Assembly (NCBI GenBank): GCA_025201805.1
Contig: MU619329.1
Location: 3,001 to 67,000, forward strand
Length of the DNA: 64,000 nucleotides
Direction of reading: 5' to 3'
Source: Parasitella parasitica NRRL 2501
Lineage: Eukaryota; Fungi; Mucoromycota
The position numbers were made by a program, and so were the translations under genes. Below, piece by piece: positions 206 through 44,320 of the stretch. The notes under the pieces were generated by a model. The model had not been told where the DNA came from. It was given only the letters and a program-made list of their open reading frames with translations, and did not search any database. Position 1 is the first letter of the stretch; each line of letters opens with the position of its first letter.

Positions 206-1147
206 TTAACGGCGGCCACTGTAATCATGGCCGGGCTGACCATGGCCATGCTGGCCATAACCAGGCTGGCCATAACCAGGCTGATTATAACCAGATTGAT
301 ACTGACCATAACCATGACCAGGAGTAGGGTTGTTGTCATAAGCTGAAGAAGTTTTTGGTGGACCATAGCCAGAGGGAGCACCATAAATAGGAGGAGAAGA
401 TTGACTGTAGCCAGAAGTATTTTGTTGGCCATATCCTGAACCGGCATTCGAAGCAGGACCAGCAATGTCTACAGGCTCAATAGTCCATAGCTGATTATCG
501 TTGTTCTTATCTTTACGCTTATACAAAATAACCTCTGTACCGTCTTTGCTAGAGCCGCCTTTAATGTCCAAGACAAGACGAGGATCAGCTAGACAATAGA
601 TAAAACCATCACGAAATCCCCATCTTTGGTTATGAGCCCTGATTTATCACAAAAGATAAGCAGCCAAACTCTATTTCCTTCAGACCAACAACTTACATTG
701 TACATTTACGTTCATATTGAACAATCTGTGAGTCAGACTGAAGGTCTCCTCCACGAATGTCCATGACTATGAATCATCATTATGCAGTTAGTATGTAACA
801 ATGCATGACCCTGTGATGTATTTTAGTATATACCTAATTCGGATTTTTTGTTGATTAAAAAGCCATTATCAGCACGCCAAAGCTACAGTGATAATGTTGA
901 GCGACAATAATACGCATTTCCCGGCGCATAGCAACTTACTTGGTTCTCACAGTCATTGTCAGGCTTTTTAGGCCAGATGATAACTTTAGAGTCGGGCTAC
1001 AATGATTATTATTTAATCTTACGTTTTTACGATAACGCGCGCCCTTTGTATACAACTTACAGTAAGTTCGCCCATGAAGACATCAATACACAAGTTTTTC
1101 TTCTTTGATCTGATAAAAAAGTATCCTTTTTCAGGGAAGCCGTTCAT
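206..1147 (-). CDS. ricin B-type (beta-trefoil, CBM13-like) lectin with G/Y/Q/P-rich C-terminal tail; multi-exon
   Basis: Exons translate as MNGFPEKGYFFIRSKRKNLCIDV / PDSKVIIWPKKPDNDCENQ / LWRADNGFLINKKSEL / VMDIRGG...IVQY / NQRWGFRDGFIY...VLDIKGG...NQLW, giving three QxW repeats. GT-AG introns. Confidence 0.85.
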
Positions 1148-1292
1148 GATGATAAATATTTACACAAATATAAAATTGTAAAGAAAGAAAAACAAAGATT
1201 TGAAATTATGCGGGAGTCTTTAAATACGCAATTAAACATCGCTAGTTCAACTTTAATCAGATTACAATAAACTGGCTACCACCGTTTTTCTT

Positions 1293-3296
1293 TTAGATGC
1301 AATTTTCCATCAGACTATTTGTTTCAGTTTCATCCAAGCAGAGCAGTTTGGCAAGGATTGGCACCATGGCCTACAAAAGAGAGAAAGGGCAATGATATGC
1401 GCAGATTAATGCCAAATGATGATTTAGGCCACTGTCTCGACATTGTACCTGCTTGTTTTCAGACATTAAAAACTTGACAAGCACATTTTTTAAGTACTCA
1501 ACATTCATGTCTTGGCGTTTTTCAAAAGCATCAATTTTTCTATTTTTACGTACGAAATGTTAACAGAAATTATTGTGGAATACTATGTTGACTTGCCTTA
1601 ATTCGTCTTTAAGCACCTAATAAACAAGTCGGTTGTTTTAAGCCATGGCTTGCATTTTATGTCAGCAACATACCTTTTCTTGCGTTTGTAGCGCTGTAAT
1701 CTTATCTTGGCTTTCGTAAAGCATTTCGCTTAATCTTTGCACTTGTTTTTCTAAGCCAGTACGTTCATCTGGTATTTGACGTGACACAAGGGGTGAAAGT
1801 AAAGAGCTCATGGATGCATAGACATCCGGAGGTGTAGTTGTTGTATTAGTCGTAGTGGTCGTAGTAGTAGTGGTGTTAGTTGCTGCTATATTTGAAATTT
1901 CCATGCTATGTTGCTGCTGTTCTGGCAATTCAACGCTTTCGGGATGAGGCAATGTTGGCTTGAATATAGTGAGCTTTTCAATTTCGTTGTCTTTCATCAC
2001 TAGCTGCTGATGTAAGGCATCGTTTGCTTTTTGCAATTCCTGCAAACGCAAATGCAAGGGCTCTAAACTGTTTTCAGAGGATCTAATTTGATCAACGTAT
2101 TTAGACTGTAGTGCAGTCAATTGTTGGGTTGATTGATGGAGCTGCTTGGTCATGGCTTGTAGCTCTATAGTATTAATCAAACATTTTTAGCCCATTTGTT
2201 TCGTGTGAACACAAAGCACTCACTGGTTTCCAAAGTGGCTTTATCAGCCAGAGACAATGTTTCTCGTTTAACAAGGATGTGTTGCTTTGACTCCAATTCA
2301 TTGAGTCGGTCGATTGTTTTTCTAAGATCGTGTTCAAGCAGTGATTGCTGCTCTGCCTTTTCGTGTTGCTCATGTTCGTATTTGGTTTTTTCTAGTTCCA
2401 TCTGCTCGACAAGCATCTGTAATTGAATGATCCGACTAGTATCACTCTGCTTTTCCTTATTTTTCTCAAGTAGAATGTGAGCTCTCTTTTTGTATTGCTC
2501 ATAATCATTTTTAGTTTGCTCTAATTGAACCGAAACTTGCCGATTCTTGGCTTCTAAACGCTTGATTTCGGTTCCATAGAATGTCTTTGTGCTAGTATCT
2601 TCAGTATTCAGTTTCTCTATCATTACTGCAGTGTCTCGAGTTAGTGGCAGCAGCAGCATTAGCAGCAGCAAAATAAAACTTACATTGCTGTGTCTCTGAT
2701 GTTGCTTTGTAAGATTGCTCGCTTTGTTGGCATTCCTCCAGTTCTGTCTTTAACTTGTCAATTTCGACGGTTTTGGACGCAATGCTCACGCGGTAGTTAT
2801 CGATATTTTTGGATGCTTGACCAAAGATTTCTACAGGTACTGTTAGCCTTGGGTCTTGTTCAAGCTAATCTTGCTTTACCTCGCATTCTTCTGAGTTTTT
2901 CCTCATATTCATCTAGCACACGGGCAAAACTTAACTTCAAGTCTATCAAAATACATAGTAATATATACTTGTTTTGGTAGCTAATGTCTCTTGCAGCTTC
3001 GAATGCTCAGCTTTTTGGTGCGTTAATTGGTATTTTAGGTCTTTTACTTGCTCTTGGAGCTGAAAGTTGGTTTTATCTGATTCTCGCATCATGTTGGGTG
3101 AGCTGGAGCCTCCAGACGTTGGCTTCTGCTGTTTTCATTTATTACGTGAATACAGACGAGATCAAAATTGCACTCTTGCTACTTTACTGACCTTGAGTCG
3201 AGATCTGATTGACTCGAGCTCTCTTTCTATTCTCTCGACTTGTTTTTCTGCTCTCAACGCTCGCTCTTTGTCCGTTATTGTGCTATTGTCTGCCAT
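1293..3296 (-). CDS. coiled-coil golgin with C-terminal GRIP domain; multi-exon
   Basis: Long heptad-rich exons; C-terminal NVEYLKNVLVKFLMSENKQ / AMVPILAKLL matches the GRIP motif. ATG at 3296 (MADNSTITDKER). Confidence 0.8.
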
Positions 3297-3451
3297 ATAA
3301 GGTGTATCCCAATCAAAAGGACAATTATTCAGGCTGAACATGTTGAAGTAGGACAGCCACTAGTCATATTAACAAGCCACTGTTTGCATGATCAAAATAT
3401 TTTCTTGAAGGATTATCTTTGCAGGCGTTTTCTCTCTTATAAAACAGAATA

Positions 3452-4287
3452 ATGAAGGCACCTACATCTCAAGATAACATATGGATAGCAGCTGGTAGGT
3501 TTCCGTCTGGTTTGGTATGAATCAACGACTAACACTACGCTAAGGTGATGGCCAAGTTGACCGAGTGAGAGTAAGCGCATCAATGCACATTTATTAAATC
3601 ACGCAGTAATATGTATACTCATACTCCATTTCCAGGAATTGCTAGAAAATGGTGTTGAAGCTGGAGCCCACGACGAGTTTGGATATACTGCTATGTATGT
3701 GCTTACTGCCATTGATCTGATTTTATCCTTACACCTCTTGATATAGGCATGCCGCCGTCTCTTACAACCAAATTGAAATGGTTAAATTTTTAATTGACAG
3801 TAATGTCAACGTCGATATCGAGGACTTTGAGAAAGATACACCGCTCTATGTTGCTGAGAACGTCGAAATGGCACAGCTTTTATTAGACAATGGTGCTGAC
3901 CCCAAACATACTAACGAAGATGGCATCACACCCGCAATGGCAGCTTATGAAGAGGGTTGGGAGGAAGTTGCGCAGCTATTAGCCAGTATTACAAAGGAAG
4001 TTCTCCCTAGCAAAGAACAAGAGATTGACCCTCTGGCATATATTGAGCAAGAAGACGACGAAGCAATAGCAACAGCAACAGAAGTTGAAGTTGAAACTAT
4101 TGCTCAAACAACACAGCCAGACAGCAATATTCAAGACCAAGACGAGATGAGCGAGGAATTATCAAGTAAAATGCAAAATATCATGAAGCACATTGAAGAA
4201 CAAGGTGGAGTAGCAGATGAAGACGAGCTTCGAGAACTAGTTGCCAAAATGCTGTTGGATGAGATGCAACAAAAGCTGGATAAATAA
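3452..4287 (+). CDS. ankyrin-repeat protein with acidic tail (YCR051W-like); multi-exon
   Basis: DNIWIAAG / DGQVDRVR / ELLENG...DEFGYTAM / HAAVSYNQIEMVKFLI...DTPLYVAE are ankyrin repeats. Confidence 0.85.
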
Positions 4288-16400: not shown

Positions 16401-17407
16401 GGTTTCGAACAAGTTGGTCAGCAAGGCATGGGCCTCTGGTGTCACAACTGACTCTGCATCGAAGGTGGATTGTTTGTGCAGTTGCTGTGGTTGAGGCTCA
16501 CCTTCTATTTCTACTATTGCTGCAACTCGCTGTTTACGGGGTATAATACTTAGCACACTCGACCCATAATTCTTCAAAAACGAAGCAACCAAAGGCAAAT
16601 TGATATGATCGTTATCGTTCGATAACAATTCCTTTAATACTTTGTATAGAAAAGGCTCTTTGACATGGTTTCCTGGTTTTTTCGTTGCTGATTGTTGAGA
16701 TTTCGTTTCGCCTATTAATACAGCAACTACATCGCGATGGCTAGTTTCGATACCACCTACATTTACAGACGACAGCGCTGGGATACCATCTTCCACATAG
16801 CGTAATACATTCACTAACCAGAGTTCACAAACAATACGTAAATAGGTACGTTGCTTAACGATACGCGCTGACTCATCCTTCTCCTTTTGTTCCACGGATA
16901 GAGTTGCTAGGTATTGTTTACTCGGTGGTTGTAACACTTTGGCGAGTTGATAACTTAAGAGTAAGGTGAATGTATCTGGGAATCGTTGATGTAAAGCCGA
17001 GATAACCTTTTCATTTCATGTTTGTTTAGAATATACACGATGCATACACTTTTACAGACAAAAAATAACCTACTTCTACGCCCGCAGCAATGTCTACGTT
17101 CGTTTTGCATTTGAGCAAACCTTCCATCACACCACTCACAATTTCATTGATATACTTTTCCAAGCTAAGTTTGTTGATATCGTTCAATAGTTGTGCCTTC
17201 ATATCTGCGCCTAGCAAGGTTTTGCATTTATTGATGAATGTTGTGTTTTTCTTGATGTTGCTGTCGAGATTCTTAGGGATTTCTGAAATGTATCTCGTTG
17301 ATTTTCACGCTTTTAACTAAGAACAAGTATCAAAAATACTTACCACTCTTCCCTCTTTCCCATGCAAGTTTGTTCAAACATCGAAGCTTTTTTTTATTTT
17401 CTTCCAT
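13492..17407 (-). CDS. UPF2: nonsense-mediated decay factor Upf2 (three MIF4G domains); multi-exon
   Basis: NLDSNIKKNTTFI, IWEDDDARKFYEDLPDL, DLLPYYSRLIATL, NQRRIAVAKYLGELYNY, acidic linker and Upf1-binding C-terminus. The start codon is approximate. Confidence 0.93.
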
Positions 17408-17899
17408 TGCTGATACCTTATTGTGATGAAAAGAGTGAAAAAAAGCAGCAAACATCTGTATTCCGTAAGGGGTGACGTTTTTTCACCGAATGGCTAGAAT
17501 CTCCAATGTAATCTATCAGGCGTATGTCTATTAATGAAAATTGAAGACACTACGATTAATCTACTACGCCGGGCTCTTTTACATAAAGAACTATTTTTAA
17601 AATTTATTGATTCAACATGTATTTATCTGCGTGCTGTGTATTGTTTGGTAACCACTGGCATTTGGCAGTTACTACAGTGCTCATATATAAAAAATTAATA
17701 AAACCACATCCTAATTTTAGCAACTGACATTTTCTCTCTTTGACCCTTACAAATATTTTCTGCCATGCAGTAGCTTAGAATAAAACACCATGTATACAAT
17801 TCTATTTAAATACTGTAACAGTATATCAAGCTAAATTCCGAAAGAAGAAACAGATGATTTTGGTTACTTTTTATTAAACAATTTATAAATGATAATGTC

Positions 17900-20800
17900 A
17901 CTTACCCAGTAGTATTAAAAGGTCAAAGTCAAAGATGCAGCGCTCAATTAATATTGAGCTATCTCCATGTTTTATATTTGTTTAATAACCTTCAAAGAGT
18001 ATTGCCTCCATCGAAAGGCGAGCCCAGTATCTGTTTTCTGTACAAAAAAGATAGGGCTAAATTGGTGCGCTTGGCAGTGGCGGGGTTTGGGTCGAAGCAG
18101 GGGAAAGTTACTCCAAACAAAAGGCAACCAAGACCAGCAAGACCAATTGCAAGTGCTGAGACTTGGTCCCGGCACATTGTCTTGAAAGCATTGGGGCATT
18201 CGGGATTTAAGCAAAGAAACGAACAGCCTGTTCGTTGTATTTTGCCATTGAGAGCAGCCACAGGATGAGAGAGCTTGTGGAAGCAGAAAACACACGTTTG
18301 TGTATAGCGGCCATGTCGCTGCTGTTTCCAGAACCCATCAAATTGTCTGTGTCCCTTGATGCGAGAGCCGAATCCGTGTCCACGATCACCGACAAACATA
18401 ATCGGCCTCTTTGCACAAGAACTCTTTCTCTCGTAAGCTGCTAGTCTGTCAAAGTCTTTTCTGTAAGAGAGTTCCAGCCGTCTTCTTCTTTTTGTCATGG
18501 ATTGGTTGTACTAGAATGAGCGCAACAATGCGCGCGCATTAGTGTGATGCGAATAGGCTTGCTCCAAACCATCAGCTGTTGAGCATTGATAAAGGCTATT
18601 TTTTCCAAGATCCATTTCCATCTCCAAAACTGTATACCCGTCTTCTGTGATCTTCTTTTTTCGACTCAACGAATTTGTAAAACTAGCCAAGCCGGTATCT
18701 TGATTAATTTGCTTGGAGCCCAAAGTGAGAGCGTGAGGTAGAGTCAAGTGTTTAAAAATATCAGCTTCATTTGTATTTGAACCATCAGCATTGTCTGCAT
18801 CTTTGGTATCCTCTATAGGAGGCAAACATATTTAGAATCAGTTCCTTTAACTATATACATATGTGTTCAAAGGCATTGAGTTACATACCCAAGATCTGAA
18901 ACCTATTGTACAGCTTCAAGTGTGATGCGAAACAATCGATATCAAAAAACACTGTCTCGGTAGTCTTTATAATGCCATTATCCGTGCCACTGAACACGGC
19001 TGTTGTCATATCCATGTCTTCATCCAGCTTACATTCCTCTACCTTTCTACAGCATCCCTTGCTACCCACAGTAAAGGGCTTAAATGGTATTAGATTTTTC
19101 AAACCATCCACCAAAGGTTTTCCATATTCATAAATCTTCCGCCGCAATGACGGAAGCATCTCCTTTGTATCTCGAATAGCTACCATTAATCTTCTCTTCC
19201 TTAACTTTACTGCTTCCACATTCTGATAGCGCTCGTCTTTTTCTTCAACTTTAGCCTTCCAAGTCTTCGTAAGATCAGAAGTTTTGTCCCTTTCTTGGGC
19301 ATCTACGACTTTCTCATAACATTGTTTTTGTTCTTCAAAGTTGGTTCTCCAAGCTTTCTTGAGACCACGGACACTGTCGTTGTCTTGAAGAAACTGATAC
19401 AATTCGTTTGCGCGATCCCTGAGTGACTTATCGAGCTCCTTCTTTTGAGCCTTCATAGCTCGTAACTGGTCGTCATCGGTATGATGGCTCAGCTTGCTTT
19501 TTGTTTCTGGGTTCCTGCGACTACACTTGAAATGTCCAATGCTGCCACACAATCTGACAGTCTTCGATCCTGGTAAGATGTGTATTCTATTTACGAACTC
19601 CATCCCATAGCTTGATGGCACGCTTTTCAGTTTGCCAATGTTAAAGAAACTGCTAAAGACGGCGTCTTTATGCTTTACGTAATTGCCTTAAAAGTCTCGA
19701 AGATACATCCGTTTTGAAAGTTTGCTCAAGCAGAAAAGTGCATACAGGGTCGTTGTGTCGATAAGAAGTGCATGCAAAGTAGTGGGTCTGACTATTGGAA
19801 TAATTTAGCAACTTGGCCTTCATATTCGATTGAGCGCAGTAGTTGGTTCGCCATCAAGATGAACTTGAGTTGGCATGGAAGGAGATGATAAGTATCGCTT
19901 GATGCTATGTATGGCTGAACGAAGCTAGTAATTTTGATGATTGTTGCAGATTCTTGTGTAGTGATGTGTTCATCCTGATCTTGGAGGTATGCGTCTGTGA
20001 TATCTTGCGTGGCAAACAATGCTGATCTTGCAATGTTGACTAACTGCCTGATTCTTTTTCTAGATACATTAGTATTGTTCCCTTTCTCGTAGTCCTCTCT
20101 ATCATCAGTATCGCTTTCTTGGCGCTTTTCTTGCTGCTGCTGCTGCTGCTGATGTTTTGGATTTCTATCCCTTTCCGCTTGCTACATACATTCCGAGTTA
20201 TGACACTATGTCTTCCTTTAAAAACCAGACGACTCCTACCTCTCTACAAAGTACTTGCTCATATGTACCGATTTTCATCTGGCACATGTCTGCTGCCTCA
20301 TGCTTTTCTTTCTCTTCATACTTGGCTTTTCGCTTCTTTTCATCGGAAAACAGTTTTTGTCTTCCATTTCTTGTCTTGATCAGCACTGAAATTTCTGCCA
20401 TTGGGATACTGCAATTTGTCGCTCTTTGTCTGCCTTTATAGTTTTTTCGAAGCTTGGCCGATTGTCTTTCAGTCTTCTTCGTCTTGATAGCGTGGACTTA
20501 ATTGGGAGATAAATGTACAAACAACAAGAAGTTCAAGAGCTTTTTAAGTAGCTTGTTGACAATAGTATTCTCGGACCACATAATACGAAGATTCGTGTAA
20601 TACTGTTGGCGAGCCATCTTCATAACGTGGAAGGACAGATTTTGATGTGGGTTGGCTTCATCACGGCCCAAAACGTTTACAATTGCCTTTTGGAGAGGCG
20701 ACTTTTTAAATTTAGACTCTTCAATACCCATTTGACCATAATATGTTGAGTGCATTTGTTCCAAATAGGGTTGTAGAAACAGCGATTGATAGTGAGCATT

Positions 20801-22152
20801 GAACTCGTCATTCTCGAGAGAGCTGGAATTTAATGGCTTTGGTACAGTGATATCTTCCTCTAAATACCCTTCTGGCAGTATTGACGCAATGCTGTTTCCA
20901 CCATCGTAGACAAGTTCAATTTTGCCATCATTAGATTCAAATGTATACTTAGCAAACAACAGAGCGACTTTGAGAGCCTGCTTGCTAAAGTCAGACGATT
21001 AATTAGATACTTTCTCAATGGTAGCACCGATTGTATTACTGAATAACGACATGATATGTCGTCTGGCAAGTCATCTCTGAGCACTTGACTTAAGAAATTG
21101 AGCATGCGCAAAATTTCTCAGCGTCATCTTGAATCGCTCCGTCATTGTCTTCATCTTCGCTATCTTCACTCTCTTTATCATCATTGCTACCATCATCCTT
21201 TTCTGGTAAATCCAAAGAGATTGGAAGTTCTTCTCAACAAATTCTGTCCAGTATTCATGATTCTTCTTTCGAATTCCAGCCTTTTTATTCTGTGTATACA
21301 CGGTGCTCAACATCGTTGTGATTTTTCCTGGATTTGCAGGAACCATACGAAAATAGCATATAAACGCTGATAAGCTTCGATAAAGAGCAGAATAAACACT
21401 GTCGCATACGCCATAAGAACAGGCATGATCATCGCTATCTGAGCATAACTTGATTTCCACTGGGCAATGTCTCCATCAAACGTTTTTCGGTTTTTGATAT
21501 CGGAGTTCGAAAAAATCACGCGTTGTATGGGTGTGCTTGTATGTTCGTGCTAACGCTAAAATTGGAGCTATAATTACCATTATTTATGGTCATCGGTCTC
21601 AAAAGCAGATTTTAAATCAACACAAATTCAACTTAGTAGTATAAAATCAGATCATTAAATATTTTTATATTTCAGTTCGGATTGTGTAGTCGATATAAGA
21701 TGTTAATTAAAAAATGTCGACTTTAAAAAAATGTATTTGATTTTGTCGGACCAAGCTCATACCAAGTTTGTAAAATGCTTGACAAATCAAGCCAATATTT
21801 GTATAAAGTTAGCTCAAGTTAAGCTTGGCAAGAGCTTGATATAGTTTTTCAAGCTTTGAAATGGCTGAATTTAGTATGTAAATAAGAATTAAGCAAGACA
21901 AACATAAGCAAGAAGGAATGGATTTAGCAAATGCTCTGGTTGGGGTTTTCAGTTCCATTCCAGTGTGTTGATTTTTGAGAAACGGCGTTAAGCCAAGCAC
22001 ATCTTATTTTCAAAAACTAATAAAGACTTTAGAAAATAATAAGTAAAATATGTGCGTATAAAGAGAGTAAATAATGTTGAAAGTCGGGCGAAAAAGCTTG
22101 AATCTCTCGAAATTGGATATGTTCTAATTGAAAAAGGCGATTTTTTAAGCTG
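17900..22152 (-). mobile_element. Fanzor1-carrying DNA element; 5' end TA|CAGCTTAAA at 22152, 3' end approximate
   Basis: Contains the Fanzor pseudogene. The 5' terminus is defined by homology with a second copy starting TA|CAGCTTAAA at 43830. No transposase ORF was found inside. Confidence 0.65.
17992..21313 (-). pseudogene. Fanzor1 (eukaryotic TnpB-like RuvC RNA-guided nuclease), frameshifted and with nonsense codons
   Basis: Collinear fragments: SQVLRDDLP; YYTNLRIMWS..KLLKKLLNFLLFVHLSP; PIVRPTTLHALLIDTTTLYALF..KDAVFSSFF; RuvC-I-like FSGTDNG (D at 18980-18982); FVGDRGHGFGSRIKGH; Zn finger CVFC...CLNPEC; RuvC-III-like RDQVSALAI (D at 18166-18168). In-frame TAG at 18511-18513 and several frameshifts. 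Confidence 0.85.
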
Positions 22153-22846
22153 TACACTTTGTTCTATTTAATAATATGTATGTGTAAATACTTATTTTGG
22201 TCTGTTACCAGATAATATGAAATAGAAAAACGTATACATTTAGGTTAGCATAATTATTATCTCACAGTTTACATTCTTTTTCCAGTCCTTGAAAATGAGC
22301 AAAGCAGCGATTGTTTATGATAAAAGATGTGTATAACAGTTATGAAGGCTTAATTTATCAGGTACAAAACTATTGAGGTTTATTGAACTTGATAAGAAGC
22401 TGTCTATTTATATGGAAATCAATCCACATAAATCAATCTGTGAATTCAATCAGATTATGTTTAACATTTGATTGTCAAATAAGATTCTTATAACACAGTA
22501 GTAGTCAGAACAAGACCTATTTCTACAATTTAAAAAATGTAGTCAAATAACAATTTCATTAAAACAATCTTGACCTGCTTGAAATCCCCACTTTTCAGAT
22601 CATTCATAACTCACTAGAGAGCTGGTATTTCTCTGCCTTGATTCAGGTATAATTCTATTTTCAATGCCATCTTTTACATGGCTTTCGAAGGATGTTCAAG
22701 GGAACTGTTCCTTCATTCTTTGCATAAAGATGAAAGATTGTCACGAGCATGGCTTATCATTTTTTCCGCTTTTCTTCTTGACTTCTCTCATTCCAAAATT
22801 TAAAGTTTTTTTATTTAGACAGCTTACATCAAAAATTTGATTAGCA

Positions 22847-43829: not shown

Positions 43830-44320
43830 CAGCTTAAATCTGAGTTTCAAATATTACAACTCCGAATTTCGAAAAATTCGCGCGACCGATTCATGGGAAA
43901 TTTGACAATATCTACCATAACATACCATCTAAGAGACATCCAAAGCTGCAAAAGAGTCAACGCTTAGCTTTTCAGGTTAGGTCATGGTTCTACGGTCATT
44001 TTAGCAAAAGTGGTGTGTAAATATTTGATATTGATGATAAATATTGAAAAATAAAACTGTTTTTGTGGATAACTTTTGATAGAGACATTTCCCAGTGGAA
44101 ATCAAGTTATGCTCAGATAGCGATGATCATGCCTGTTTTTATGAAGCATAAAACAGGGGTTATATTGCTCTTTATCGTAGCGTATCAGTGTTAATATGCG
44201 ATTTTCGTATGGTTTCCGCAGATAACTTACTAGATTTAAAAAAATCATACAAATGTTTTCGCCAAATAATAGCTCCAATTCAACGCTGAGTTTTCCAAGT
44301 TAGATCACGGTTCTACGGTT
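43830..44320 (+). mobile_element. non-coding relative of the Fanzor element (5'-end sequences only; 3' end not defined)
   Basis: Starts TA|CAGCTTAAA..TTTCAA..TCCGAATTTCGAAAAATTC, like the reverse complement of 22100-22154. 44075-44215 matches the reverse complement of 21340-21485, including 47 identical bp (44091-44137 = rc 21418-21464). Confidence 0.75.

What the first reader, a model, noticed from the sequence alone, without database searches (positions are those of the whole stretch)
17992..21313. Hidden Fanzor1 RNA-guided nuclease locus between UPF2 and SPB1
Seen: about seven short minus-strand ORFs join collinearly into a ~1,050-1,100 aa protein. It has a RuvC-I-like G-T-D-N-G motif, a G-x-G-S-R-I-K-G-H segment, a C-x2-C...C-x4-C zinc finger and a RuvC-III-like RD-x2-SA-x2-I motif. 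Established: this domain order defines TnpB/Fanzor (OMEGA) nucleases, and Fanzor1 is known from Mucorales transposons. Inference: this is a decayed copy of an unusually long Fanzor1 family, and intact siblings elsewhere in the genome could be programmable nucleases.
Basis: partly seen in the sequence, partly recalled or inferred. Interest (0 to 1): 0.9.

Follow-up and report, generated by a model that had tools for sequence, protein, structure and literature searches.

The report
Dead copy of a Fanzor1 transposon
This stretch is a broken, non-functional copy of a jumping gene that once encoded a long Fanzor1 RNA-guided DNA cutter; the family has been known in Mucor-type fungi since 2013, so the locus is real but ordinary.

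Summary
Window 17810-21332 (minus strand) is one copy of a roughly 4.4 kb repeat found at more than 70 places in this genome, which appears to be Parasitella parasitica. The copy lacks about 850 bp at its 5' end.

Its pieces align in order with relatives and form a three-exon gene. Two of the "breaks" are conserved GT-AG introns. The real lesions are three nonsense codons, four frameshifts and a 33-bp in-frame deletion that removes the RuvC-II catalytic glutamate.

Pfam finds nothing on the pieces themselves. A profile of homologues hits the solved Fanzor1 SpuFz1 (E 3e-7). A folded homologue matches SpuFz (Z 15.9), PpFz (15.2) and TnpB (11.5).

The closest published relative is MCi-8 of Mucor circinelloides (Bao and Jurka 2013). 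That paper already lists Mucorales Fanzor1 proteins of 1067-1375 aa, so the length is not new.

All eight readable near-full-length siblings are broken. Other copies are withheld, so intact siblings in this genome remain untested. Intact relatives exist on contigs from other samples (1,148 aa). Reads could not be checked.

The scan has reported relics of Fanzor elements elsewhere in this genome before.

The parts
17810..21332 (-). 5'-truncated copy (3,523 bp) of a ~4.37 kb multi-copy Fanzor1 element
   Evidence: Own-genome DNA search: 77 matches with shared limits at query 408-3933. Full-length siblings span about 4,370 bp. The 3' end was fixed from 19 aligned tails.
20255..21332 (-). Remnant of exon 1 (N-terminal domain). 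Start codon and about 850 bp are missing. Frameshifts: -1 near 21217, -1 near 21091, +2 near 21057. Nonsense TAA at 20500-20498.
   Evidence: Alignment to seven siblings. tblastn of P0085 and P0054.
20182..20254 (-). Intron 1 (73 nt, GTACTT...TGTAG)
   Evidence: Present in all siblings. Two intact relatives have a GT-AG intron at the same place, with matching phase.
18889..20181 (-). Exon 2. Carries a CAG/poly-Gln tract, a coiled-coil region and RuvC-I. Lesions: -1 frameshift near 19804, nonsense TAA at 19690-19688, and an 18-19 bp deletion near 19670.
18974..18988 (-). RuvC-I motif G-T-D-N-G (Asp codon 18982-18980)
   Evidence: The equivalent D396 of homologue P0036 lies at the start of the stretch that superposes on SpuFz 374-633, which contains catalytic D383.
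18813..18888 (-). Intron 2 (76 nt, GTATGT...TATAG)
   Evidence: Sequence read directly. The Mucor gene model P0009 reads across the junction. Relatives L052, L053 and L054 have an intron at the same place.
17992..18812 (-). Exon 3. Carries the Gly-rich Fanzor1 motif, the site of the lost RuvC-II Glu, the zinc ribbon (TNB) and RuvC-III. Lesions: nonsense TAG at 18513-18511 and a 9-bp deletion near 18065. Stop codon at 17994-17992.
18349..18396 (-). F-V-G-D-R-G-H-G-F-G-S-R-I-K-G-H, the conserved Fanzor1 glycine-rich block
   Evidence: Invariant or nearly invariant columns in A1 and A2. Aligns to the GD...G block of SpuFz1.
18300..18301 (-). Junction of a 33-bp in-frame deletion that removes the 11 codons P-T-L-I-T-K-E-H-N-T-S, and with them the catalytic RuvC-II glutamate and the [TS][TS] of the Fanzor motif
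   Evidence: Siblings keep the segment; only this copy and the C181 copy lack it. The Glu aligns to SpuFz1 E541 and is nearly invariant in the family (E597 of P0036).
18196..18294 (-). C4 zinc ribbon: C-V-F-C at 18283-18294 and C-L-N-P-E-C at 18196-18213
   Evidence: Weak PF07282 (Cas12f1-like TNB) matches at this place in four distant homologues.
18145..18171 (-). RuvC-III motif R-D-Q-V-S-A-L-A-I
   Evidence: Aligns to the N-R-D of SpuFz1, residue D606.
17810..17991 (-). 3' tail of the element. It has a hairpin after the stop codon, a conserved G|GTAAGT at 17905-17900, a pyrimidine tract, and the terminal ...ACCGTTACAG|TAT with AG at 17814-17813.
   Evidence: No RNA evidence was obtained here.

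Best explanation
Window 17810-21332 is a pseudogene. It is a 5'-truncated, mutated copy of a non-TIR, ~4.4 kb DNA element of Mucorales whose only gene has three exons and encodes a ~1,150-1,300 aa Fanzor1 protein. Fanzor1 is the eukaryotic TnpB-type RuvC nuclease guided by an omega RNA.

In intact relatives the protein has a family-specific N-terminal region of about 500 aa, a long coiled coil, and a C-terminal RuvC/TNB module. That module carries the D...E...D catalytic triad and a C4 zinc ribbon. By analogy with the solved SpuFz1 and PpFz1, an RNA from the 3' end of the element would guide it to cut DNA next to a short motif (inferred, not shown).

This copy cannot do that. It has no start codon, three nonsense codons and four frameshifts, and it has lost the catalytic glutamate. 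Most lesions are shared with a 98%-identical copy on contig C181. The ancestor was therefore already dead when it was duplicated, so it was copied passively. Whether it was mobilised in trans or duplicated some other way is not known.
For: Repeat family: 89 protein and 77 DNA matches in the genome, and a full-length unit of about 4.37 kb.

Family identity: a profile of 20 homologues hits SpuFz1 (8gkh) first at E 3e-7 over 240 residues, including the GD, DEYxTS, CxxC, CxNPxC and RD blocks; Cas12f follows at 0.026. A profile that includes the window's own ORFs also hits SpuFz1 first (7e-4). The AF2 model of homologue P0036 has pLDDT 85-97 over residues 380-700. Foldseek gives SpuFz 1.3e-8, PpFz 1.4e-5, Cas12f 3e-4 and GtFz 3e-4. 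VIA gives Z 15.9, 15.2 and 11.5 for SpuFz, PpFz and TnpB. P0036 aligns to the window at E 4.5e-31.

Published relative: MCi-8 shares GDRGHG, ITNEYNSSQTC, CRDQVSALAIGLAGL and the N-terminal strings.

Lesions. Introns. Intact relatives with D, E and D retained: L053 and L054.
Against: Pfam and NCBIfam give no significant hit on any window ORF. phmmer of the window ORFs against PDB sequences finds no Fanzor. The link to Fanzor therefore rests on profiles and on the fold of a homologue, not on this copy itself. The model of the sibling's last exon alone was poor (pLDDT 48). Reads were not available, so the lesions were not verified against raw data. No omega RNA, TAM or cleavage activity is shown for any member of this family.
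Confidence: 0.9

Rival explanations
1. The locus is an intact, expressed Fanzor1 gene, and the breaks are sequencing or assembly errors plus unrecognised introns.
For: Two of the apparent breaks are indeed introns. Reads could not be inspected.
Against: All three nonsense codons, two of the four frameshifts and the 33-bp deletion are shared with an independent copy on another contig (98.0% identical). Random errors would not repeat in that way. The 5' end with the start codon is replaced by unrelated sequence.
Confidence: 0.02
2. The protein family is not Fanzor1 but another RuvC/zinc-ribbon lineage, for example Fanzor2 or a recently acquired prokaryotic TnpB.
For: TnpB, Fanzor2 and Cas12f also match the model with Z 11-13. 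Pfam shows only a weak TNB signal.
Against: The best sequence and structure matches are Fanzor1 proteins, SpuFz and PpFz. The family includes entries that Bao and Jurka placed in the Fanzor1 clade: MCi-4, -5, -7, -8 and -10. The relocated glutamate in the NE..TSQTC block is the Fanzor1 arrangement. The gene has spliceosomal introns and lengths above 1,000 aa.
Confidence: 0.03
3. The relic has been co-opted. Either the ATG-initiated 168-aa C-terminal ORF (17992-18498) or the 3'-tail RNA is still expressed and has a host or regulatory role.
For: The ORF is open from an ATG to the natural stop. The ORF end plus tail folds better than shuffles (z -3.15). Internally deleted derivatives that keep this end are numerous.
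Against: The ORF lacks RuvC-I and the catalytic Glu. Its ATG follows an internal stop by chance. The copy diverges from its siblings at the neutral-looking level of 2-12%. No expression data were obtained.
Confidence: 0.05

Closest known systems
MCi-8 Fanzor1 of Mucor circinelloides (Bao and Jurka 2013, Mobile DNA 4:12, Additional files 1-3)
   Same: Same protein family. The shared strings are GDRGHG, ITNEYNSSQTC, CRDQVSALAIGLAGL, FPCFD, and N-terminal blocks such as YWxEFVExxF, SDFSxQVLKxALxF and MWSxxTIxNKLLK. The length class is also above 1,000 aa.
   Different: MCi-8 was listed as a single copy with undefined ends, 1067 aa and 2 exons. The family here has more than 70 copies or fragments and defined ends. 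It has three exons and, by exon lengths, about 1,150 aa (L053) to about 1,300 aa (Parasitella copies). The window copy is dead.
SpuFz1, Spizellomyces punctatus Fanzor1 (PDB 8GKH, 9CEU-9CEZ)
   Same: RuvC plus TNB module, the D/E/D triad positions and the zinc ribbon. It is the top hit by profile (E 3e-7) and by fold (Z 15.9, 247 residues).
   Different: SpuFz1 is 633 aa, has a single exon, and sits in a 2.1 kb element with 33-bp TIRs and TA duplications. The family here is twice as long, has a conserved N-terminal extension and a coiled coil, has introns, and shows no TIRs.
PpFz1, Parasitella parasitica Fanzor1 (PDB 9CF0/9CF1; Xu et al. 2024)
   Same: Apparently the same host species and the same protein superfamily. 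Fold match Z 15.2.
   Different: It is a different Fanzor1 lineage. PpFz1 was not among the shown sequence matches of either PDB profile search (one search showed the best 60 of 86 at E <= 10; one search went to E <= 1). The published N-terminus is unrelated. PpFz1 carries the FRI insertion that binds cyclophilin and has the TAM ATN. Nothing of that kind was tested for this family.
TnpB of IS200/IS605 (ISDra2, PDB 8H1J) and Cas12f
   Same: Same RuvC/TNB core (Z 11.5-12.8). Weak PF07282 matches.
   Different: These are prokaryotic proteins of about 400 aa, with the canonical position of the RuvC-II glutamate and no introns.

Membership tests
Fanzor1 (motif of Bao and Jurka 2013: D-X(125,275)-[TS]-[TS]-X-X-C4 zinc finger-X(5,50)-RD) | RuvC-I aspartate in a GxDxG-type strand | tested here: met
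   GTDNG at 18974-18988. Conserved as SGTDxG in the family.
Fanzor1 (motif of Bao and Jurka 2013) | [TS][TS]-X-X-Cys 125-275 residues after the Asp | tested here: not met
   Met in siblings (T-S-Q-T-C, 210 residues after the Asp in L046, counted exon by exon). In the window copy the 33-bp deletion leaves Y-T-Q-T-C.
Fanzor1 (motif of Bao and Jurka 2013) | C4 zinc finger followed within 5-50 residues by RD | tested here: met
   CVFC ... CLNPEC, then RD 8 residues later.
Fanzor1 | Conserved catalytic glutamate just before the [TS][TS] (E536 of SPu-1-1p, E541 of SpuFz1) | tested here: not met
   Deleted in this copy. Nearly invariant in the family (E597 of P0036) and aligned to SpuFz1 E541.
Fanzor1 | Significant sequence similarity to an experimentally validated Fanzor1 | tested here: met
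   Family profile against PDB: SpuFz1 E 3e-7. Profile including window ORFs: 7e-4. Single window ORFs give no hit.
Fanzor1 | RuvC plus TNB fold | tested here: met
   Shown for homologue P0036, not for the window copy itself. Foldseek SpuFz 1.3e-8; VIA Z 15.9.
Fanzor1 | Carried by a mobile element (multi-copy, defined ends) | tested here: met
   77-89 matches in the genome. Shared 5' and 3' limits with unrelated flanks.
Fanzor1 | Intact reading frame | tested here: not met
   5' truncation, three nonsense codons and four frameshifts.
Fanzor1 | Omega RNA from the 3' end, and RNA-guided, TAM-dependent DNA cleavage | not testable with these tools
   Only a fold z-score of -3.15 for the ORF end plus tail and no Rfam match. 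No RNA reads.
MuDR-, Mariner-, Harbinger- or other TIR transposon carrying Fanzor1 | Terminal inverted repeats and a target-site duplication | tested here: not met
   No inverted pair joins the two ends of the full-length copy L048. Both ends instead carry the same 8-mer TACAGTAT in direct orientation, with no variable duplication outside it.

The most novel reading that the evidence does not exclude
The family's 3' tail may be a terminal intron. A G|GTAAGT donor lies about 90 nt after the stop codon, and the acceptor ...ACCGTTACAG| lies three bases from the element's last base. Splicing of read-through transcripts would then join the conserved scaffold after the stop codon to the flanking host DNA, which could be how the guide part of the omega RNA is made. 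The donor is kept in all five lineages compared. The terminal motif is kept in four of them: the Parasitella family, L052, L054 and the published MCi-10. In L053 it is altered. The rest of the tail has diverged. Earlier agents of this scan reported RNA-contig support for such splicing on other pieces of this genome. I obtained no RNA evidence, and the window copy itself is dead.
Probability: 0.35. Interest if true: 0.7.

Novelty: new member of a known kind. Interest (0 to 1): 0.25.

Why it matters
The locus itself matters little. It is one more dead copy of a Fanzor1 family whose Mucor relatives were catalogued in 2013.

Its use is as a pointer to the family. This long, three-exon, TIR-less Mucorales lineage is distinct from the characterised PpFz1 of the same species, and by structure it is as close to SpuFz1 as PpFz1 is. 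No member has been tested biochemically.

Intact members exist on contigs L053 and L054, and possibly at the withheld loci of this genome. They would be the ones to test for RNA-guided cleavage, for the role of the roughly 500-aa N-terminal extension, and for the unusual conserved intron-like right end.

Tried and rejected
Pfam and NCBIfam on all window ORFs and on longer sibling ORFs gave no significant family. phmmer of two window ORFs, and a profile of close homologues (A1), against PDB sequences found no Fanzor.

The AF2 model of the sibling's last exon alone had mean pLDDT 48 and was unusable.

The 'open frames' of 1,251-1,458 aa reported for siblings are artefacts. Those stretches are withheld and read N/X. 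I therefore could not judge whether intact copies exist in this genome.

A profile search led by the 1,081-aa P0116 returned only its Mortierellales kin (1,066-1,686 aa) and no Parasitella protein. I prepared a second such alignment (A5) but did not send it, because it was poor.

The ESM Atlas gave no usable hit for the N-terminal piece. Rfam gave no match.

I considered and rejected a TIR-type transposon, identity with the PpFz1 family, and assembly error as the cause of the breaks (lesions shared with the C181 copy).

All searches were done exon by exon or ORF by ORF, and exon phases and lengths were checked by arithmetic only.
Full report
**What is there.** The minus strand between the stop codon at 17994-17992 and about 21330 carries a chain of short ORFs. 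The C-terminal ORF (17992-18498) finds 89 matches in the window's own genome. The DNA of 17400-22400 finds 77 matches. Their common limits are query positions 408-3933, which is window 17807-21332.

The locus is therefore one copy of a repeat. Alignment with siblings shows that they continue for about 850 bp beyond window 21332, and that full-length units measure about 4,370 bp. The window copy is truncated at the 5' end of the gene and has lost the start codon. The 3' end of the element was fixed at 17810 from 19 aligned tails, whose flanks all differ beyond ...ACAGTAT.

The host appears to be Parasitella parasitica. Database homologues carry that name, and one sits on a contig of 204,885 bp, the length of contig C52 here.

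**Gene structure and lesions.** Distant homologues align to the window collinearly, with tblastn E-values down to 5.9e-35. Two of the frame changes are introns.

- Intron 2 is at 18888-18813 (76 nt, GTATGT...TATAG). A Mucor gene model reads across this junction (P0009). Three relatives from other samples have an intron at the same place.
- Intron 1 is at 20254-20182 (73 nt). It is present in all siblings and again at the same place in the relatives.

In relative L053 the three exons have matching phases, GT-AG introns of 64 and 67 nt, and a total of 3,447 coding bases, which is 1,148 aa. This was checked by arithmetic and exon-by-exon translation, not by joining the exons.

The real lesions of the window copy are these:

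- Nonsense TAA at 20500-20498 and at 19690-19688, where siblings have CAA.
- Nonsense TAG at 18513-18511, where siblings have TAT.
- Frameshifts of -1 near 21217, -1 near 21091, +2 near 21057 and -1 near 19804.
- In-frame deletions of 18-19 bp near 19670, 33 bp at 18301/18300 and 9 bp near 18065.

All three stops, two of the frameshifts and the 33-bp deletion are shared with the copy on C181, which is 98.0% identical. These lesions are therefore inherited mutations of an already dead ancestor, not assembly noise.

**What the protein is.** Pfam, NCBIfam and phmmer against PDB sequences see nothing in the window's own pieces. An exhaustive phmmer search with the intact last exon of sibling L046 found 407 proteins at E <= 1e-3. 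Several of them are 700-1,081 aa long.

Four of ten long homologues give weak, sub-threshold PF07282 (Cas12f1-like TNB) matches at their C-termini. A profile of 20 long homologues hits the solved Fanzor1 of Spizellomyces punctatus (8GKH) first. The E-value is 3e-7 over about 240 residues, covering the GD...G block, DEYxTS, the CxxC and CxNPxC cysteines and the RD motif. Cas12f follows at 0.026. A second profile that contains the window's own ORFs again puts SpuFz1 first (7e-4).

The AlphaFold model of homologue P0036 is confident over residues 380-700. P0036 aligns to the window at E 4.5e-31. Foldseek returns only Fanzor and Cas12 structures at the top: SpuFz 1.3e-8, PpFz 1.4e-5, AsCas12f and GtFz 3e-4. 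The second-look aligner gives Z 15.9 for SpuFz (247 residues, model 387-685 on chain 374-633), 15.2 for PpFz, 11.7 for Fanzor2 and 11.5 for TnpB.

**Catalytic residues.** The catalytic residues of SpuFz1 are D383, E541 and D606. In the profile alignment, E541 (residue 935 of the MBP fusion) pairs with the Glu of the family block ...TNE(Y/H)N(S/T)SQTC, and D606 pairs with the RD motif.

The window copy keeps RuvC-I (GTDNG, 18974-18988) and RuvC-III (RDQVSALAI, 18145-18171). Its 33-bp deletion removes exactly the segment with the catalytic Glu and the [TS][TS] pair.

**Comparison with what is known.** Bao and Jurka (2013, PMC3627910) defined Fanzor1 by the motif D-X(125,275)-[TS][TS]-X-X-C4-X(5,50)-RD. 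Siblings of the window copy fit it: 210 residues from D to TS, and 8 residues from the zinc finger to RD.

Their protein file contains Mucor circinelloides entries with the family's strings. GDRGHG occurs once in that file, in MCi-8. MCi-8 also shares ITNEYNSSQTC, CRDQVSALAIGLAGL, FPCFD and several N-terminal blocks with the window's pieces.

Their table lists Mucorales Fanzor1 proteins of 1,067-1,375 aa with 2-4 exons: MCi-2 to MCi-10, ROr-4 and PBl-3. The length is therefore unusual only against the 600-700 aa majority. It is not new.

PpFz1, the characterised Fanzor1 of the same species, belongs to a different lineage. It does not appear among the shown sequence matches, and its published N-terminus is unrelated. 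Its fold matches as well as SpuFz's does.

**Siblings.** All eight readable near-full-length copies are broken. The 'open frames' of 1,251-1,458 aa come from withheld stretches that read N. The visible ends of those withheld copies are 97-100% identical to each other. That points to a young subfamily, but its coding state is unknown to me.

Intact relatives exist outside this genome.

**The element.** No terminal inverted repeats join the ends of the full-length copy L048. The 5' end begins TACAGTATCATAAC..., with variants at one base in two of the four visible junctions. The 3' end is ...CCGTTACAGTAT, so both ends carry the same 8-mer in direct orientation, and no variable duplication lies outside it. 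I cannot say which transposase moves the element.

Several loci hold the same internally deleted arrangement of three blocks (query 3835-3933, 1271-1369 and about 410-974). This arrangement recurs, so a non-autonomous derivative has itself been copied.

**The 3' tail.** The 182 nt after the stop codon contain a hairpin, then G|GTAAGT at 17905-17900, then a pyrimidine-rich stretch, then ...ACCGTTACAG|TAT at the very end.

The donor is kept in all five lineages compared. The terminal motif is kept in four of them: the Parasitella family, L052, L054 and the published MCi-10. In L053 it is altered. The rest of the tail has diverged. The ORF end plus tail up to the donor folds better than shuffles (z -3.15).

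Earlier agents of this scan reported, on other pieces of this genome, that such a tail is spliced so that a scaffold comes to lie next to flanking DNA (s1-688513, s1-697294). I confirmed only the sequence motifs and their conservation, not any splicing.

**Verdict.** The locus is a dead, truncated member of a family already described in Mucor, so its own interest is low. The family is uncharacterised biochemically and has an odd, conserved right end. It is the more interesting object.

Noticed in passing
window 17810-17991 (minus); also L033:7795-8009, L052:1647-1881, L054:3939-4173: The 3' tail of the element looks like an intron whose acceptor is the element's end: G|GTAAGT about 90 nt after the stop, and ...ACCGTTACAG|TAT at the terminus. 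The donor is conserved in all five lineages compared. The terminal motif is conserved in four of them, including the published MCi-10, and is altered in L053. The sequence between donor and terminus has diverged.
   Followed up: partly
L048:3469 and 7850; L032:3398 and 7870; L033:3437 and 7993; window 17810-17817: The element has no terminal inverted repeats. Both ends carry the same 8-mer TACAGTAT in direct orientation, and no variable target-site duplication lies outside it. It is unclear whether the 5' copy is element or preferred target.
   Followed up: partly
window 21344-21480: The sequence abutting the truncation point is not part of the Fanzor element. It is a separate short repeat (77-84% identical) that recurs near other copies of the family: C55:127524-127628, C20:198239-198318 and L048:488-626.
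   Followed up: partly
window 43830-44320: Another first-stage note calls this a second, ORF-less member of the same element family. blastn of two full-length siblings against the whole window (E 1e-5) finds only the 17.8-21.3 kb copy.
   Followed up: partly
G000 loci C61:61657-62379, C106:13606-15106, C8:341236-342128, C122:55583-56380, C62:33929-34439: The same internally deleted arrangement of the element recurs at several loci (blocks 3835-3933, 1271-1369 and about 410-974 of the query). This suggests an amplified non-autonomous derivative. NCBI gene models P0004 and P0008 are built on such copies.
   Followed up: no
window 20498-20500 and 19688-19690: Two of the three nonsense codons are CAA to TAA changes, that is C to T at CpA. 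Both are shared with the C181 copy. The mutation spectrum of the family was not analysed.
   Followed up: no
window 20120-20160: A CAG (poly-Gln) microsatellite inside exon 2 varies in length among copies, from about 8 to 20 repeats in the alignment.
   Followed up: no
P0116, P0159-P0166: Entomortierella parvispora and Gryganskiella (Mortierellales) encode many relatives of 1,066-1,686 aa, all named hypothetical. The long Fanzor1 lineage therefore extends beyond Mucorales.
   Followed up: no
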